39,756 nucleotides of DNA from Haliotis rubra (taxonomy: Eukaryota): NCBI RefSeq assembly GCF_003918875.1, contig NW_025767631.1, positions 334,245 through 374,000 of the forward strand. Direction: 5' to 3'. The stretch's first letter is position 1; every line of letters starts with the position of its first letter. Position numbers and translations under genes: made by a program. Below the pieces are notes generated by a model. That model ran no database searches. It saw only the letters and a list, made by a program, of their open reading frames with translations, and was not told where the DNA came from. Below, piece by piece: positions 8,497 through 39,756 of the stretch.

Positions 8497-8554
8497 ATGG
8501 AAAGTACCAAACGTATAGGAGCAGTTCTGGTGTTATTGCTGCTGCCAAGCCAAG
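8497..8554 (+). CDS. Gene 1 exon 1: signal peptide MESTKRIGAVLVLLLLPSQ(G)
   Basis: ATG, basic n-region and hydrophobic h-region, ending in a strong phase-1 donor CAAG|gtaagc. The phase matches exon 2 and the length (58 nt) matches gene 2 exon 1. Linkage across a 9-kb intron is inferred. Confidence 0.7.
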
Positions 8555-9219
8555 GTAAGCATAGATATACGTTTGTTTTAATGTATGCACTTGTATGGGG
8601 TGGAGAGGAGGTGGGGTGTCAGGGTTAGCGTCCAGGTCACGCCAGCTGATTGTGTAACAGTTCTTTCACAGTTTGAAAACTCCGTCCGTGGGATCTAACG
8701 GTATATTTCAGGGTGCAGAGAAATAATATTGCACACGTTGTATACTCAACTTAATATATCACTGGTATAGTTAATACACATCTATATCATATGAATCTAT
8801 TTCACGGTATATGTACCGTGTAGATATACGTGTATAATAATATGCAATAAAACTGTGCGGACAAATAATTATAAGTTGTTACACTGAAAACATCCCTCTA
8901 ACGATACGGTCGGAGATTTGTATTAGGAAACTCATGAAAATGTTGTACAGAGATCTAAAGGTTGTACAAATGAAGGTCGTACATACATTTTATCAAATGC
9001 ATACACATATGTGTTGACAAATATAAAGGTGAGTGCTGGTATATTTTATTTTAAAGAAAAGGAAACACAGTTATACAGACAGAACACTGCCCGACATTTG
9101 TCGTTTCTCGGCATAATAATGATTAAGGATTATGAGTGCTTCGATTATGTTACTTATTTCAAAATTCCTCCGACGACCCACAACTCCCACAGCGAAAACA
9201 CCAATTCAATTCAACAGCG

Positions 9220-10470
9220 CCCACACACACACACACACACACACACCACAACACCCACTACCTCTCACTCCAGCACTAACACCAACCCTCCTCCACTACT
9301 AACACCTACCCCCCACCCCTCCCACTCCAACACCTACCCCACCCCCTGCCCCTCCAACACCTACACCTACCCCACCCTCCCTCTCCAGCACCTACCCCCA
9401 CCCCTCCCACTCCAACTCTACCCCTGCCAACACCCAGCTCCCCCTCCCACTTTAAAACCTACCCCACCCCTCCTACTCCAACACCTACCCCACCCCTCCC
9501 ACTCCCTCTCCAACACCTACCCCCACCCCTCCCACTCCACCGCCACCCTCCTACTCTAATACCAAGCCCCACCCTCCCACTTAACACCTACCCCACACCC
9601 CTCCCAATTCAACATCTACCCCCAACACTAACCCAGCCCTCCCACTCCAACACCTACCCCTCCCTCTCCAACCCTACCCCACCCCTCCATCTCCAACACC
9701 TTCCCCCACCCCACCCTTCTCCAACACCTACCCCAACCCCCCAACACCTACCCCTCGACCAACACCTCCCACTCCAACACCCACCCTCCATCTCCAACAC
9801 CTACCCCCACCCCTCCTTCTCCAACACCCACACCCACCCTTCCACCCTACCCCCATCTCCCACCACCTACCCCCCCAACACCCTCCAACACCTCCCACTA
9901 CAACCCCACCCCTCCCCCTCTCCAACACCTACCCCCACCCCTCCCTCTCTAGCACCTACCCCCACCCCTCCTTCTCCAACACCTACCCCCGACCCTCCCT
10001 CTCCAACACCTACCCCACCCCCTCCTCCAACACCTACCCCCACCCTCCCACTACAAACCTACACCCACCCCTCCCACTACAACACCTACCCCCACCTTTC
10101 CTCCCTCTCCAACACCAACCCCCCCCACCCTCCCTCTCAAAGCACCTACCCTCCCACCAACCCTCCCACTCTCCAACACCAAGCCCCACCCTCCAACACT
10201 CCAACACCTACACCCACCCTTCCCCTCTCCAACACCTACCCCCACCTCTCCACCCACCTCCCACCCCTCCCTCCAGCACCTACCCCACCCTCCCACTCTA
10301 ACACCACATCCCCCTCCCACTTCCCAACACCTACCCCACCCTCCCACTCCAACACCTACCCCCACCCTCATTCTCCAGCACCTACCCCCTCCCACTCCTA
10401 CCCTAACACTAAGCTCCACCCTCCCACTACAACACATACCCCCACCCTTCCCTCTCCAACACCTACCTCC
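9220..10470. repeat. (CA)n plus C-rich degenerate minisatellite (ccaacacctacccccaccctccc-like)
   Basis: Strong C/A strand bias. The ORFs called here are low-complexity artefacts. Confidence 0.93.
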
Positions 10471-10750
10471 AGACACAAGTGACCGACACAAAGAGACTGA
10501 CGAACCCGGGGGTGGACTGACGTTGTCGCCATGGCTCCCATTAGTGTAGAGATATGCACAGGGGACGACTCGGATGTAAGGAGCATGACGTCCATCATTA
10601 GCTTGTGAGTGATCATGTCCACGTGAAATCCCCGACAGGTCAGTCAGACATGAATTAACCCTCACCCTGGATGAATGAAGACAGTACTGTAGCATGTTAA
10701 GATGGTTTGTTATTGGGAAGTAAGGACGAGAAGATCCCACAAAAAATTCC

Positions 10751-13689
10751 GACCTGTAGTTAAACTGTATCATGGCGCCCGGCGTTTAGTAGTTGCAACA
10801 AGGGATGGTGAGCTGGACCTGTAGTTAAACTGTATCATGGCGCCCGGCGTTTAGTAGTTGCAACAAGGGATGGTGGGCTGGACCTGTAGTTAAACTGTAT
10901 CATGGCGTCCGGCGTTTAGTAGTTGCAACAAGGGATGGTGGGCTGGACCTGTAGTTAAACTGTATCATGGCGCCCGTTTAGTAGTTGCGTTTAGTAGTTG
11001 CAACAAAGGGATGGTGAGCTGGACCTGTAGTTAAACTGTATCATCCGGCGTTTAGTAGTTGCAACGGCTGGACCTGTTTAAAGTATCATGGCGTCCGGCG
11101 TTTTGCAACAAAGGAGCTGGACCTGTAGTTAAACTGTATCATGGCTGTAGCCCGGGAGTTGCAACAAGGGATGGTGAGCTGGACCTGTAGTTAAACTGTA
11201 TCATGGCGTCCGGCGTTTAGTAGTTGCAACAAGGGCTGGTGGGCTGGACCTGTAGTTAAACTGTATCATGGCGTCCGGCGTTTAGTAGTTGCAACAAGGG
11301 ATGGTGGGCTGGACCTGTAGTTAAACTGTATCATGGCGCCCGGCGTTTAGTAGTTGCAACAAGGGATGGTGGGCTGGACCTGTAGTTAAACTGTATCATG
11401 GCGCCCAGCGTTTAGTAGTTGCAACAAGGGCTGGTGGGCTGGACCTGTAGTTAAACTGTATCATGGCGCCCGGCGTTTAGTAGTTGCAACAAGGGATGGT
11501 GGGCTGGACCTGTAGTTAAACTGTATCATGGCGCCCGGCGTTTAGTAGTTGCAACAAGGGATGGTGGGCTGGACCTGTAGTTAAACTGTATCATGGCGCC
11601 CGGCGTTTAGTAGTTGCAACAAGGGATGGTGGGCTGGACCTGTAGTTAAACTGTATCATGGCGTCCGGCGTTTAGTAGTTGCAAAAAAGGGATGGTGGGC
11701 TGGACCTGTAGTTAAACTGTATCATGGCGCCCGGCGTTTAGTAGTTGCAACAAGGGATGGTGGGCTGGACCTGTAGTTAAACTGTATCATGGCGCCCGGC
11801 GTTTAGTAGCTGCAACAAGGGATGGTGGGCTGGACCTGTAGTTAAACTGTATCATGGCGCCCGGCGTTTAGTAGTTGCAACAAGGGATGGTGGGCTGGAC
11901 CTGTAGTTAAACTGTATCATGGCGCCCGGCGTTTAGTAGTTGCAACAAGGGATGGTGGGCTGGACCTGTAGTTAAACTGTATCATGGCGCCCGGCGTTTA
12001 GTAGTTGCAACAAGGGATGGTGGGCTGGACCTGTAGTTAAACTGTATCATGGCGCCCGGCGTTTAGTAGTTGCAACAAGGGATGGTGGGCTGGACCTGTA
12101 GTTAAACTGTATCATGGCGCCCGGCGTTTAGTAGTTGCAACAAGGGATGGTGGGCTGGACCTGTAGTTAAACTGTATCATGGCGCCCGGCGTTTAGTAGT
12201 TGCAACAAGGGATGGTGGGCTGGACCTGTAGTTAAACTGTATCATGGCGCCCGGCGTTTAGTAGTTGCAACAAGGGATGGTGGGCTGGACCTGTAGTTAA
12301 ACTGTATCATGGCGCCCGGCGTTTAGTAGTTGCAACAAGGGATGGTGGGCTGGACCTGTAGTTAAACTGTATCATGGCGCCCGGCGTTTAGTAGTTGCAA
12401 CAAGGGATGGTGGGCTGGACCTGTAGTTAAACTGTATCATGGCGTCCGGCGTTTAGTAGTTGCAACAAGGGATGGTGAGCTGGACCTGTAGTTAAACTGT
12501 ATCATGGCGCCCGGCGTTTAGTAGTTGCAACAAGGGATGGTGAGCTGGACCTGTAGTTAAACTGTATCATGGCGCCCGGCGTTTAGTAGTTGCAAACAAG
12601 GGATGGTGGGCTGGACCTGTAGTTAAACTGTATCATGGCGCCCGGCGTTTAGTAGTTGCAACAAGGGCTGGTGGGCTGGACCTGTAGTTAAACTGTATCA
12701 TGGCGCCCGGCGTTTAGTAGTTGCAACAAGGGATGGTGGGCTGGACCTGTAGTTAAACTGTATCATGGCGCCCGGCGTTTAGTAGTTGCAACAAGCAACA
12801 AGGGATGGTGGGCTGGACCTGTAGTTAAACTGTATCATGGCGCCCGGCGTTTAGTAGTTGCAACAAGGGATGGTGGGCTGGACCTGTAGTTAAACTGTAT
12901 CATGGGGTCCGGCGTTTAGTAGCTGCAACAAGGGATGGTGGGCTGGACCTGTAGTTAAACTGTATCATGGCGCCCGGCGTTTAGTAGTTGCAACAAGGGA
13001 TGGTGGGCTGGACCTGTAGTTAAACTGTATCATGGCACCCGGCGTTTAGTAGTTGCAACAAGGGATTGTGGGCTGGACCTGTAGTTTAACTGTATCATAG
13101 CGCCCGGCGTTTAGTAGTTGCATCAAGGGATGGTGGGCTGGACCTGTAGTTAAACTGTATCATGGGGTCCGGCGTTTAGTAGCTGCAACAAGGGATGGTG
13201 GGCTGGACCTGTAGTTAAACTGTATCATGGCGCCCGGCGTTTAGTAGTTGCAACAAGGGGTGGTGAGCTGGACCTGTAGTTAAACTGTATCATGGCGTCC
13301 GGCGTTTAGTAGTTGCAACAAGGGATGGTGGGCTGGACCTGTAGTTAAACTGTATCATGGCACCCGGCGTTTAGTAGTTGCAACAAGGGATGGTGGGCTG
13401 GACCTGTAGTTAAACTGTATCATGGCGTCCGGCGTTTAGTAGTTGCAACAAGGGATGGTGGGCTGGACCTGTAGTTAAACTGTATCATGGCGCCCGGCGT
13501 TTAGTAGTTGCATCAAGGGATGGTGGGCTGGACCTGTAGTTAAACTGTATCATGGCGTCCGGCGTTTAGTAGTTGCAACAAGGGATGGTGGGCTGGACCT
13601 GTAGTTAAACTGTATCATGGCGTCCGGCGTTTAGTAGTTGCATCAAGGGATGGTGGGCTGGACCTGTAGTTAAACTGTATCATGGCGTC
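10751..13689. repeat. 65-bp tandem satellite, ~45 copies
   Basis: Unit gacctgtagttaaactgtatcatggcgcccggcgtttagtagttgcaacaagggatggtgggctg, very homogeneous in the centre. Confidence 0.97.
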
Positions 13690-13844
13690 TCGGTGGACAA
13701 CGCCATACAACCAGCTGTAGTCTAGCATATAGAACAAGACCTGAAACCGCCATTGAACCACGAGAGAAACTAGGTCATAGTCTCTTTATATGTTTTAATG
13801 TATTAGTTAACTTGTAAAATTAAATATATGTTAGCGGCACATAC

Positions 13845-39400: not shown

Positions 39401-39560
39401 GGAGGCGTTGGGGTAGCCGAGTGCTTTGACCGTTCGCTTCTCACGCCAAAATTCCGGGTTCCATTCCCCACGTGGGGGGCAATGTGTGAAGCCCATTTCT
39501 GATGTGTTTTACCGTGATGTTGCTGTAATGTTGCATACCGCGGCATACATACTCATCCAC
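39401..39560 (+). mobile_element. tRNA-derived SINE family 2
   Basis: ggaggcgttggggtagccgagtg...ccgggttccattccccacgtgg...gtgtgaagcccatttctg. Confidence 0.8.
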
Positions 39561-39655
39561 TAAAAAGAACATTTTTTTATGAACTGCATTATTTCTTGGC
39601 ATCATATACAGGCACTTGCCCTGTGGCCTGACATCTCAATACAGTCTCATCAACA

Positions 39656-39721
39656 TGTTGTTGTTGTTGTCGTCGTTGTTGTTGTTGTTGTTGTTGTTGT
39701 TGTTGCTGTTGCTGATGTTGT
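39656..39721. repeat. (GTT)n microsatellite
   Basis: Imperfect gtt repeats. Confidence 0.9.
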
Positions 39722-39734
39722 CAGCATGATGTAT

Positions 39735-39756
39735 AAACATTTAACTTTCATTCCAG
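39735..39756 (+). other. Probable 3' splice site for the next exon of gene 2 (beyond the window)
   Basis: Window ends in tttaactttcattccag (branch-like ttaac, pyrimidine tract, CAG). Confidence 0.55.

What the first reader, a model, noticed from the sequence alone, without database searches (positions are those of the whole stretch)
8497..39756. Tandem pair of unannotated-looking lectin-like/CUB-like single-pass receptors (candidate molluscan recognition receptor family)
Seen in the sequence: seven exons (58+402+321+36+96+91+244 nt = 1248 nt, 415 aa plus stop) splice with canonical GT-AG sites and consistent phases. They give signal peptide, Cys-rich domain, beta-rich domain, S/T/P stalk, TM and cytoplasmic tail. 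A second gene about 9 kb downstream repeats the same phase-1 exon series, including the 58-nt leader exon and the 36-nt micro-exon. The ORF track shows only fragments of this. Established knowledge: the Cys spacing (C..LxC..hxh...C...VxxxCSxxxxC...hxVxxxC) resembles SUEL/rhamnose-binding lectin domains, and YI...CxCxV...LLDxRL...WxxV resembles divergent CUB domains. Inference: both frames are intact yet strongly diverged, they are tandemly duplicated, and they sit in a repeat-rich region. This fits a diversifying cell-surface recognition family (immune, allorecognition or gamete). I recognise no named gene.
Basis: partly seen in the sequence, partly recalled or inferred. Interest (0 to 1): 0.75.

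Follow-up and report, generated by a model that had tools for sequence, protein, structure and literature searches.

The report
Abalone lectin-like/CUB surface receptor genes
The window holds two neighbouring, spliced and expressed abalone genes for single-pass cell-surface proteins with a cysteine-rich (probably lectin-derived) domain and a CUB-fold domain; public annotation already lists them as "uncharacterized", no one has studied them, and they occur only in abalones.

Summary
RNA contigs from four runs confirm junctions 1-2, 2-3 and 3-4.

One correction: RefSeq models in four abalone species splice the last exon once more, giving 417 aa rather than 415.

The genome is Haliotis rubra. Gene 1 is LOC124263740. 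Gene 2 is the 5' part of LOC124263734, which RefSeq fuses to a third paralogue beyond the window. Both loci are annotated only as "uncharacterized protein".

An exhaustive profile search of 1.84 billion proteins found relatives in Haliotis only.

- **First domain:** probably a much-altered SUEL lectin. Support comes from language-model neighbours, the cysteine register, and a shared exon phase and boundary with true SUEL exons. Pfam fails, profile comparison is marginal and the fold model is poor.
- **Link to a larger group:** the CUB-like exon is significantly related to that of a large SUEL-CUB gene array elsewhere in this genome, which this scan had already noted on other DNA.
- **Selection:** "diversifying" is not shown. 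Pairwise dN/dS is 0.28-0.52; the CUB domain is fastest at 0.44-0.77.

Function is inferred only: a ligand-binding receptor that signals through conserved YxxP tyrosine motifs.

The parts
8497..8554 (+). Gene 1 (LOC124263740) exon 1: start codon plus signal peptide, 58 nt, ends in phase 1
   Evidence: Sequence. The RNA contig overhang before exon 2 reads its last 30 nt. Matches P0009 residues 1-20.
17484..17885 (+). Gene 1 exon 2: Cys-rich domain with 8 invariant Cys, probably SUEL-lectin-derived, 402 nt, phase 1-1
   Evidence: (RNA depth and joint).
18394..18714 (+). Gene 1 exon 3: CUB-fold beta-sandwich domain, 321 nt, phase 1-1
21036..21071 (+). Gene 1 exon 4: 36-nt micro-exon (N-glycosylation site, one beta strand, invariant Cys)
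   Evidence: The RNA overhang behind 18715 reads this exon in all four runs. Modelled as a strand with pLDDT about 85.
21439..21534 (+). Gene 1 exon 5: Ser/Thr/Pro-rich stalk, 96 nt
   Evidence: Matches P0009.
22862..22952 (+). Gene 1 exon 6: transmembrane helix, 91 nt. Its acceptor is the last unit of a 30-nt minisatellite (21782-22877).
   Evidence: dN/dS 0.04-0.17.
23070..23292 (+). Gene 1 exon 7: cytoplasmic tail with the conserved EEPVYSLP (YxxP) motif.
23510..23536 (+). Gene 1 exon 8, coding part (GEAPASSV-stop), used by RefSeq models of four species
32503..32560 (+). Gene 2 (5' part of LOC124263734) exon 1: 58-nt leader with signal peptide
   Evidence: Matches P0001 residues 1-20.
34799..35209 (+). 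Gene 2 exon 2: Cys-rich domain, 411 nt
38104..38445 (+). Gene 2 exon 3: CUB-like domain, 342 nt
38557..38592 (+). Gene 2 exon 4: 36-nt micro-exon
39297..39338 (+). Gene 2 exon 5: short Ser-rich stalk, 42 nt. The TM and tail exons follow just beyond the window end.
   Evidence: Compares with P0004 and P0012.
14612..17040 (.). Two Tc1/mariner transposase remnants inside intron 1 of gene 1. They are not part of the gene's product.
   Evidence: Pfam DDE_3 and HTH_Tnp_Tc3_2. Absent from the H. asinina orthologous intron.

Best explanation
The window holds two of three tandem paralogues of a Haliotis-restricted family of type I membrane glycoproteins.

Each protein has these parts, in order:
- a signal peptide;
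- a roughly 135-aa domain with eight invariant cysteines, most likely a strongly diverged SUEL/rhamnose-binding-lectin domain that has lost the canonical sugar-binding motifs;
- a CUB-fold beta sandwich, completed by a strand coded on a 36-nt micro-exon;
- an O-glycosylation-type Ser/Thr/Pro stalk;
- one TM helix;
- a short tail with conserved YxxP tyrosine motifs.

Shown: gene structure, splicing, expression, the CUB fold, restriction to abalones, conserved synteny, and purifying selection on average with a faster CUB domain.

Inferred: the head binds an extracellular ligand (protein or glycan). The tail, once tyrosine-phosphorylated, docks SH2 adaptors of the Crk/Nck type. That is how CUB-bearing scaffolding or co-receptors such as DCBLD1/2 work.

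The family is a divergent offshoot of a much larger abalone SUEL-CUB-stalk receptor group.
For: - **Exons, phases and RNA joints:**
- **RefSeq identity:**
- **Only Haliotis proteins found:** 5 representatives with E below 1e-52 among 1.84e9 proteins; 16 clusters in H. rubra, H. rufescens, H. asinina and H. cracherodii.
- **SUEL lead:** Atlas feature neighbours are PF02140 for P0009 (0.89, 184/256) and for the 40%-identical P0012 (0.90, 194/256). In hhalign, six Cys fall in SUEL register.
- **Link to a bona fide SUEL gene on contig C2785:** its first-domain exon scores 34.6 bits against PF02140, above the cut-off. Its next exon matches my CUB-like profile with hhalign score 29, P 1.9e-4, against a shuffle mean of 12.2 +/- 2.6 and 0 of 150 shuffles reaching it. 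Both exons are phase 1-1 and end at the same motifs: C-[IV]-K|G and VW-x-[RK]-V-x-G|.
- **Selection:** TM exon dN/dS 0.04-0.17 and 0.28-0.52 overall. This is a functional gene, not a pseudogene.
- **Tail motifs:** YSLP is conserved in all A and B1 tails; YHMP and YLVP in all B2 tails. YxxP motifs in DCBLD1/2 recruit CRKL (PMC6029619, title and abstract).
- **Synteny with H. asinina:** small GTPase gene, A-type gene, then B-type gene, in the same order.
Against: - No Pfam family hits either domain, even at E up to 10, in any of 17 members.
- SUEL ancestry of domain 1 is unproven. hhalign is marginal: P 0.04, with 10 of 200 column shuffles as good. AlphaFold confidence is low and the fold search on that model is noise.
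- By eye, the SUEL motifs YGR, DPC and KYL read LQR, RPS and VLV, so sugar binding may be lost.
- There is no evidence on ligand, tissue, localisation or phosphorylation. The run and sample names were coded, so tissue is unknown.
- The YxxP reading rests on short motifs only.
Confidence: 0.6

Rival explanations
1. A diversifying species- or self-recognition receptor (gamete, allorecognition or larval-cue). Its head would be under positive selection.
For: - Genus-restricted family.
- Tandem birth and death: 3 copies in H. rubra against at least 7 in H. asinina and at least 6 in H. cracherodii.
- The CUB domain evolves two to three times faster than the Cys-rich domain: dN/dS 0.44-0.77 against 0.19-0.33.
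- 11 of 18 variants between the RNA contigs and the reference are non-synonymous, and 7 of 8 in exon 3.
Against: - No pairwise dN/dS above 1 in any domain.
- The recent gene 2 / gene 3 pair has dN/dS 0.5-0.6.
- No tissue information and no gonad or gamete link.
- Too few sequences for a site test.
Confidence: 0.2
2. An innate-immune pattern-recognition lectin receptor that binds microbial rhamnose or galactose glycans through the SUEL-like domain.
For: SUEL_Lectin neighbours by language-model features. Kinship with a large SUEL-CUB array of the kind often expanded in mollusc immunity.
Against: The canonical SUEL sugar-binding motifs and the seventh Cys are not conserved. Pfam gives no hit. No induction data.
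Confidence: 0.15
3. Not a working gene pair: decaying duplicates or an annotation artefact in a repeat-rich region.
For: The third paralogue beyond the window has a frameshift in its TM exon and a stop plus frameshift in its tail exon. RefSeq fuses it to gene 2. Introns are full of minisatellites and transposon remnants.
Against: - Genes 1 and 2 have intact frames through all exons.
- Gene 1 is spliced and present in RNA contigs of four samples.
- Orthologues are intact in four species, with a strongly constrained TM exon.
Confidence: 0.05

Closest known systems
Haliotis rubra RefSeq LOC124263740 (XP_046554401.1) and LOC124263734 (XP_046554356/7), with orthologues in H. asinina, H. rufescens and H. 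cracherodii
   Same: These are the same genes. P0009 equals the gene 1 exons residue for residue. P0001 and P0011 begin with gene 2 exons 1-4.
   Different: They are annotated only as 'uncharacterized protein', with no Pfam domain. The LOC124263734 isoforms I could read (X2-X4) join gene 2 to the damaged third paralogue and omit gene 2's own TM and tail exons.
Abalone SUEL-CUB-mucin-stalk receptor arrays on contigs C2807, C2785, C2623 and C1026 of the same genome (earlier notes s1-339701 and s1-344798)
   Same: Same order of parts. The CUB-like exon is related (hhalign score 29, z about 6.5). Exon phases are the same, and the exons end at the same motifs. A stalk exon follows.
   Different: Their first domain passes Pfam SUEL_Lectin; mine does not. 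Mine is about 50 aa longer, with extra N-terminal cysteines and an insert. Profile searches of the genome with my domains find only the three C2741 copies.
CUB-domain single-pass receptors and co-receptors (DCBLD1/2, neuropilins, Kremen, Neto, CDCP1)
   Same: An extracellular CUB fold, one TM and a short tail. Like DCBLD1/2, the tails carry YxxP motifs (PMC6029619).
   Different: No sequence-level CUB match. No discoidin, LCCL, kringle, WSC or LDLa domains. Only one or two YxxP motifs. No orthology.
SUEL / rhamnose-binding lectin domain proteins (sea-urchin egg lectin, fish RBLs, the latrophilin RBL domain, EVA-1)
   Same: Eight cysteines, six of them in register. The predicted order of strands and the long helix fits. 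Language-model similarity.
   Different: The YGR, DPC and KYL motifs are not kept and the seventh Cys is replaced by Ser. The domain is about 135 aa, against about 95. Pfam and PDB profile searches are negative.

Membership tests
SUEL_Lectin (PF02140) | Score above Pfam's gathering cut-off | tested here: not met
   No hit at E up to 10 for the exon peptides or any of 17 family members. The genome scan with PF02140 found 27 other exons but not these.
SUEL_Lectin (PF02140) | Eight cysteines in the conserved order (four disulfides) | tested here: inconclusive
   Eight Cys are invariant. hhalign puts six in SUEL register. The DPC cysteine aligns to an invariant Ser, and two extra Cys lie N-terminal. 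Significance is marginal.
SUEL_Lectin (PF02140) | Sugar-binding motifs YGR, DPC and KYL | tested here: not met
   Read from the alignment: LLQR, (R/H)PS and VLV/LVV stand at those places. The motif definitions come from my own knowledge of RBL domains.
SUEL_Lectin (PF02140) | RBL alpha/beta fold | tested here: inconclusive
   AlphaFold pLDDT is 23-48 in the ectodomain model and 43.8 for the domain alone. Foldseek gives only E of 0.5 or worse, to unrelated folds.
SUEL_Lectin (PF02140) | Same exon phase and boundary as a bona fide SUEL exon in a related gene | tested here: met
   Both are phase 1-1 exons ending C-[IV]-K|G. The C2785 exon scores 34.6 bits against PF02140.
CUB (PF00431) | Score above Pfam's gathering cut-off | tested here: not met
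   No CUB hit in any of 17 members.
CUB (PF00431) | CUB beta-sandwich fold | tested here: met
CUB (PF00431) | N-terminal disulfide (C1-C2) and Ca2+ site | not tested
   Invariant Cys at P0009 positions 161 and 186/188 are spaced as C1-C2 would be. I could not read the model's coordinates. The Ca2+ ligands were not examined.
Abalone SUEL-CUB-stalk receptor superfamily | Homologous CUB-like exon with the same intron phases, followed by a stalk exon | tested here: met
   hmmsearch E 0.018 over the full profile among about 640 fragments. hhalign P 1.9e-4, with 0 of 150 shuffles as good. Phases and boundaries. Stalk ORF.
DCBLD-type YxxP scaffolding receptors | Several tail YxxP motifs phosphorylated by Src/Abl kinases and bound by CRK/CRKL SH2 domains | not testable with these tools
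   The motifs are present and conserved (YSLP; YHMP and YLVP). Phosphorylation and binding are unknown. LCCL and discoidin domains are absent, so this is an analogy, not membership.

The most novel reading that the evidence does not exclude
The family is an abalone-specific recognition receptor whose CUB head is under site-specific positive selection. It would mediate species-specific recognition (gamete, larval settlement cue or self/non-self). Copy number turns over between species and alleles are rich in amino-acid changes.
Probability: 0.15. Interest if true: 0.7.

Novelty: new variant of a known kind. Interest (0 to 1): 0.4.

Why it matters
Abalones are a classic system for fast-evolving recognition proteins and are farmed species with disease problems. 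This is a genus-restricted, tandemly turning-over receptor family with a lectin-derived plus CUB head and tyrosine-motif tails. That makes it a concrete, untested candidate for ligand recognition and signalling.

The result also gives three practical points:
- RefSeq's LOC124263734 models fuse two genes.
- Both domains escape Pfam, so domain-based screens of mollusc immune or recognition repertoires miss the family.
- The family connects to a much larger SUEL-CUB array in the same genome.

Tried and rejected
- **Pfam** on exon peptides and on all 17 members: no SUEL or CUB hit.
- **PDB sequence-profile searches** with A1, A2 and A6: nothing meaningful.
- **Word search** with the exon 2 peptide: none, and the length filter excludes full-length kin anyway.
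- **AlphaFold of domain 1**, in the ectodomain and alone: low confidence. Foldseek on it returned HIT-family noise, which I discarded.
- **hhalign of domain 1 against ten abalone SUEL exons:** P 0.04, and 10 of 200 column shuffles scored as well. I treat this as inconclusive.
- **Genome profile searches** with both domains at E up to 10: only the three C2741 copies.
- **Literature searches** for the LOC and XP identifiers, and for Haliotis + SUEL + CUB: nothing on this family.
- **Reads:** I laid them only on 17400-20040, to avoid the intronic minisatellites that the tool may refuse. Junctions 4-5, 5-6, 6-7 and 7-8 therefore rest on RefSeq models, not on reads.
- **Joined exons:** Searches were exon by exon by reference, or used RefSeq proteins that the tools returned.
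- **Genome allowance:** The link to the SUEL-CUB arrays therefore rests on one full copy (L050).

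
Full report
**What is in the sequence**

I re-read every splice site. Gene 1 has these exons:
- 8497-8554 (58 nt)
- 17484-17885 (402 nt)
- 18394-18714 (321 nt)
- 21036-21071 (36 nt)
- 21439-21534 (96 nt)
- 22862-22952 (91 nt)
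- 23070-23313 (244 nt with the stop)

All are bounded by AG and GT.

Gene 2 starts 9.2 kb downstream, and five of its exons lie in the window:
- 32503-32560, a 58-nt leader
- 34799-35209 (411 nt)
- 38104-38445 (342 nt)
- 38557-38592, a 36-nt micro-exon
- 39297-39338, a 42-nt Ser-rich exon

. The last two bases of the window are the acceptor of its TM exon. Gene 2's own TM and tail exons lie just beyond, at extended coordinates 39757-39839 and 40066-40278.

The two genes are 42% identical over the exon 2 domain (E 1e-30) and 37% over the exon 3 domain (E 2e-19).

**Expression and splicing**

Four runs of one study hold RNA-type contigs. These cover exons 2 and 3 and nothing in the intron between them. 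Two runs carry the joint 17885|18394 with GT..AG ends.

The overhang before exon 2 reads the last 30 nt of exon 1. The overhang after exon 3 reads the micro-exon in all four runs, with one base different. Junctions 1-2, 2-3 and 3-4 are therefore shown directly.

I laid only 17400-20040 because the later introns are minisatellites. The remaining junctions rest on RefSeq models.

The contigs differ from the reference at 18 exonic places, 11 of them non-synonymous.

**Identity**

The window is contig C2741:334245-374000 of a 1.378-Gb genome. The names attached to matching proteins show that it is Haliotis rubra.

Gene 1 is LOC124263740. It splices after 23292 to an eighth exon at 23510 that codes GEAPASSV-stop. 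The orthologues in H. asinina, H. rufescens and H. cracherodii do the same.

Gene 2 is the 5' part of LOC124263734. The isoforms of that locus that I could read run on into a third paralogue: exon 2 at C2741:386576-386947, exon 3 at 405682-406011, tail near 411375.

That third gene has a frameshift in its TM exon, and a stop plus a frameshift in its tail exon, in this assembly. It is either decaying or carries assembly errors.

All of these loci are labelled 'uncharacterized protein' and carry no precomputed Pfam domain.

**Distribution**

I searched 1.84 billion representative proteins exhaustively with a profile of the exon 2 domain. Five proteins came back, all with E below 1e-52 and all from Haliotis.

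A profile of the whole family found 16 clusters at 90% identity, again only in H. rubra, H. rufescens, H. asinina and H. cracherodii.

H. rubra has three copies. H. asinina has at least seven, spread over about 210 kb of one chromosome, all on one strand, between a small-GTPase gene and an SDF-family transporter gene. H. cracherodii has at least six.

The H. asinina and H. rubra loci are collinear down to the intronic minisatellites. The Tc1/mariner remnants in intron 1 (14612-17040) are specific to H. rubra.

I found no paper on these genes.

**The second domain is a CUB fold**

With a 17-sequence alignment, AlphaFold2 models residues 131-253 of the mature ectodomain (exon 3 plus the micro-exon) at pLDDT 75-90 as a beta sandwich.

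Foldseek's best matches are the CUB domains of Kremen, spermadhesins, PCPE-1, MAp19, MASP and TSG-6.

Pfam's CUB model does not match any member. This is fold-level membership only. The micro-exon codes an additional final strand with an invariant cysteine.

**The first domain is probably a degenerate SUEL lectin**

Against, or not decisive:
- Pfam gives no hit.
- PDB profile searches give no hit.
- hhalign against ten abalone SUEL exons gives P 0.04, and 10 of 200 column shuffles scored as well.
- AlphaFold confidence is low, so the fold search is noise.

For:
- The nearest clusters by language-model features are SUEL_Lectin, both for gene 1's protein (0.89, 184 of 256 features) and for a 40%-identical B-type paralogue (0.90, 194 features; 21 of 30 hits).
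- Six of the eight invariant cysteines fall in SUEL register.
- There is a link through a sister family, described next.

**Link to a larger family**

This scan had already noted arrays of SUEL-CUB-mucin-stalk receptor genes on other contigs of this genome. I tested that lead on one copy on C2785.

Its first-domain exon passes Pfam SUEL_Lectin (34.6 bits against a cut-off of 31.4).

Its next coding exon, 5.3 kb downstream on the same strand, is the best match to my CUB-like profile in 20 kb of six-frame fragments. The match covers the whole profile (E 0.018).

hhalign gives score 29 and P 1.9e-4. Shuffles average 12.2 +/- 2.6, with a maximum of 22.4, and 0 of 150 reach the observed score.

That exon also escapes Pfam CUB.

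In both families the lectin-position exon is phase 1-1 and ends two residues after the last cysteine (C-[IV]-K|G). The CUB-like exon is phase 1-1 and ends at VW-x-[RK]-V-x-G|. A Ser/Thr/Pro-rich ORF follows.

The sister family has at least 31 CUB-like exons, on C2807, C2785, C2623, C1026 and C2225.

I conclude that the C2741 genes are a divergent branch of this group. I put the SUEL ancestry of domain 1 at about 75%.

**Selection**

I computed Nei-Gojobori estimates exon by exon for the four A-type orthologues:

| Part | dN/dS |
|---|---|
| Overall | 0.28-0.52 |
| Cys-rich domain | 0.19-0.33 |
| CUB-like domain | 0.44-0.77 |
| TM exon | 0.00-0.17 (0.04-0.17 at informative divergence) |

. The young gene 2 / gene 3 pair (dS about 0.085) gives 0.5-0.6.

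The genes are constrained on average, and the CUB head is the fastest part. Diversifying selection is not shown, but site-specific selection is not excluded.

**Likely mechanism (inferred)**

The signal peptide, the N-glycosylation sites, the mucin-type stalk and the basic residues after the TM helix fix a type I orientation.

The tails carry conserved YxxP motifs:
- EEPVYSLP in all A-type tails, and EPIYSLP in B1-type tails;
- HYHMP and YYLVP (FYLVP in P0004) in all B2-type tails, including gene 2.

.

pYxxP is the docking motif used by the CUB-bearing scaffolding receptors DCBLD1/2 to recruit CRKL (PMC6029619). The SH2 preference itself is from my own knowledge.

The most likely working model is a ligand-binding surface receptor or co-receptor that signals through tyrosine phosphorylation. 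The ligand, the tissue and the biological role are unknown.

**Verdict**

- The CUB reading is supported.
- The SUEL reading is probable.
- 'Diversifying' and 'unannotated' are not supported.
- The family is real, expressed, abalone-only and unstudied, but it is built from known kinds of parts and is already present, unnamed, in public protein sets.
- The scan found the wider superfamily before, on other DNA of this genome.

No exon-joined model was sent to any tool. The N run at 7998-8214 was left alone.

Noticed in passing
window 21782-22877: A 30-nt minisatellite of 36.5 copies. Each unit repeats the real acceptor of the TM exon (tgtgtttcag|GTCTGGAC), in frame. RefSeq uses the last copy. 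The orthologous stretch in H. asinina is only about 200 bp. Another note of this scan (s1-327982) covers it.
   Followed up: partly
window 14612-15671 (-) and 15936-17040 (+): Two Tc1/mariner transposase remnants (DDE_3, HTH_Tnp_Tc3_2) inside intron 1 of gene 1. They are absent from the H. asinina orthologous intron.
   Followed up: yes
window 3777-5842, 6240-7595, 9261-10471, 10751-13687, 20045-20869, 21168-21419: Six further minisatellite arrays with periods of 23, 34, 27, 65, 31 and 14 nt. The 65-nt array has 39.5 copies at 96% identity. Four of them (3777-5842, 6240-7595, 9261-10471, 10751-13687) align to matching positions of the H. asinina locus, so these arrays are old and positionally conserved.
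   Followed up: partly
beyond the window: C2741:386576-411600 (L002, L006, L010): A third paralogue, about 90% identical to gene 2 in exons 2-3. It has a 19-kb intron, a frameshifted TM exon, and a tail exon with a stop and a frameshift. RefSeq LOC124263734 isoforms X2-X4 fuse it to gene 2. The contig ends at 411880.
   Followed up: partly
G000 contigs C2807, C2785, C2623, C1026, C2225 (e.g. L050:4103-4348 and L050:9663-9980): Large arrays of genes with a bona fide SUEL_Lectin exon followed by a CUB-like exon: at least 27 SUEL exons and at least 31 CUB-like exons. Some carry stops.
   Followed up: partly
window 7998-8214 and 684-860: Two runs of N. The first lies 283 nt upstream of gene 1's start codon, so the proximal promoter is incomplete.
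   Followed up: no
window 30013-30908 (+) and 36697-37122 (+): ORFs of 116, 146 and 67 aa in the intergenic region and in intron 2 of gene 2, with no Pfam hit. They are probably decayed mobile-element fragments. A 193-nt tandem duplication lies at 36410-36783.
   Followed up: no
upstream of the window, about C2741:328600-332200 (L011): Orthologue of the H. asinina Arf/Ras-family small GTPase gene that flanks the cluster. It confirms synteny.
   Followed up: partly
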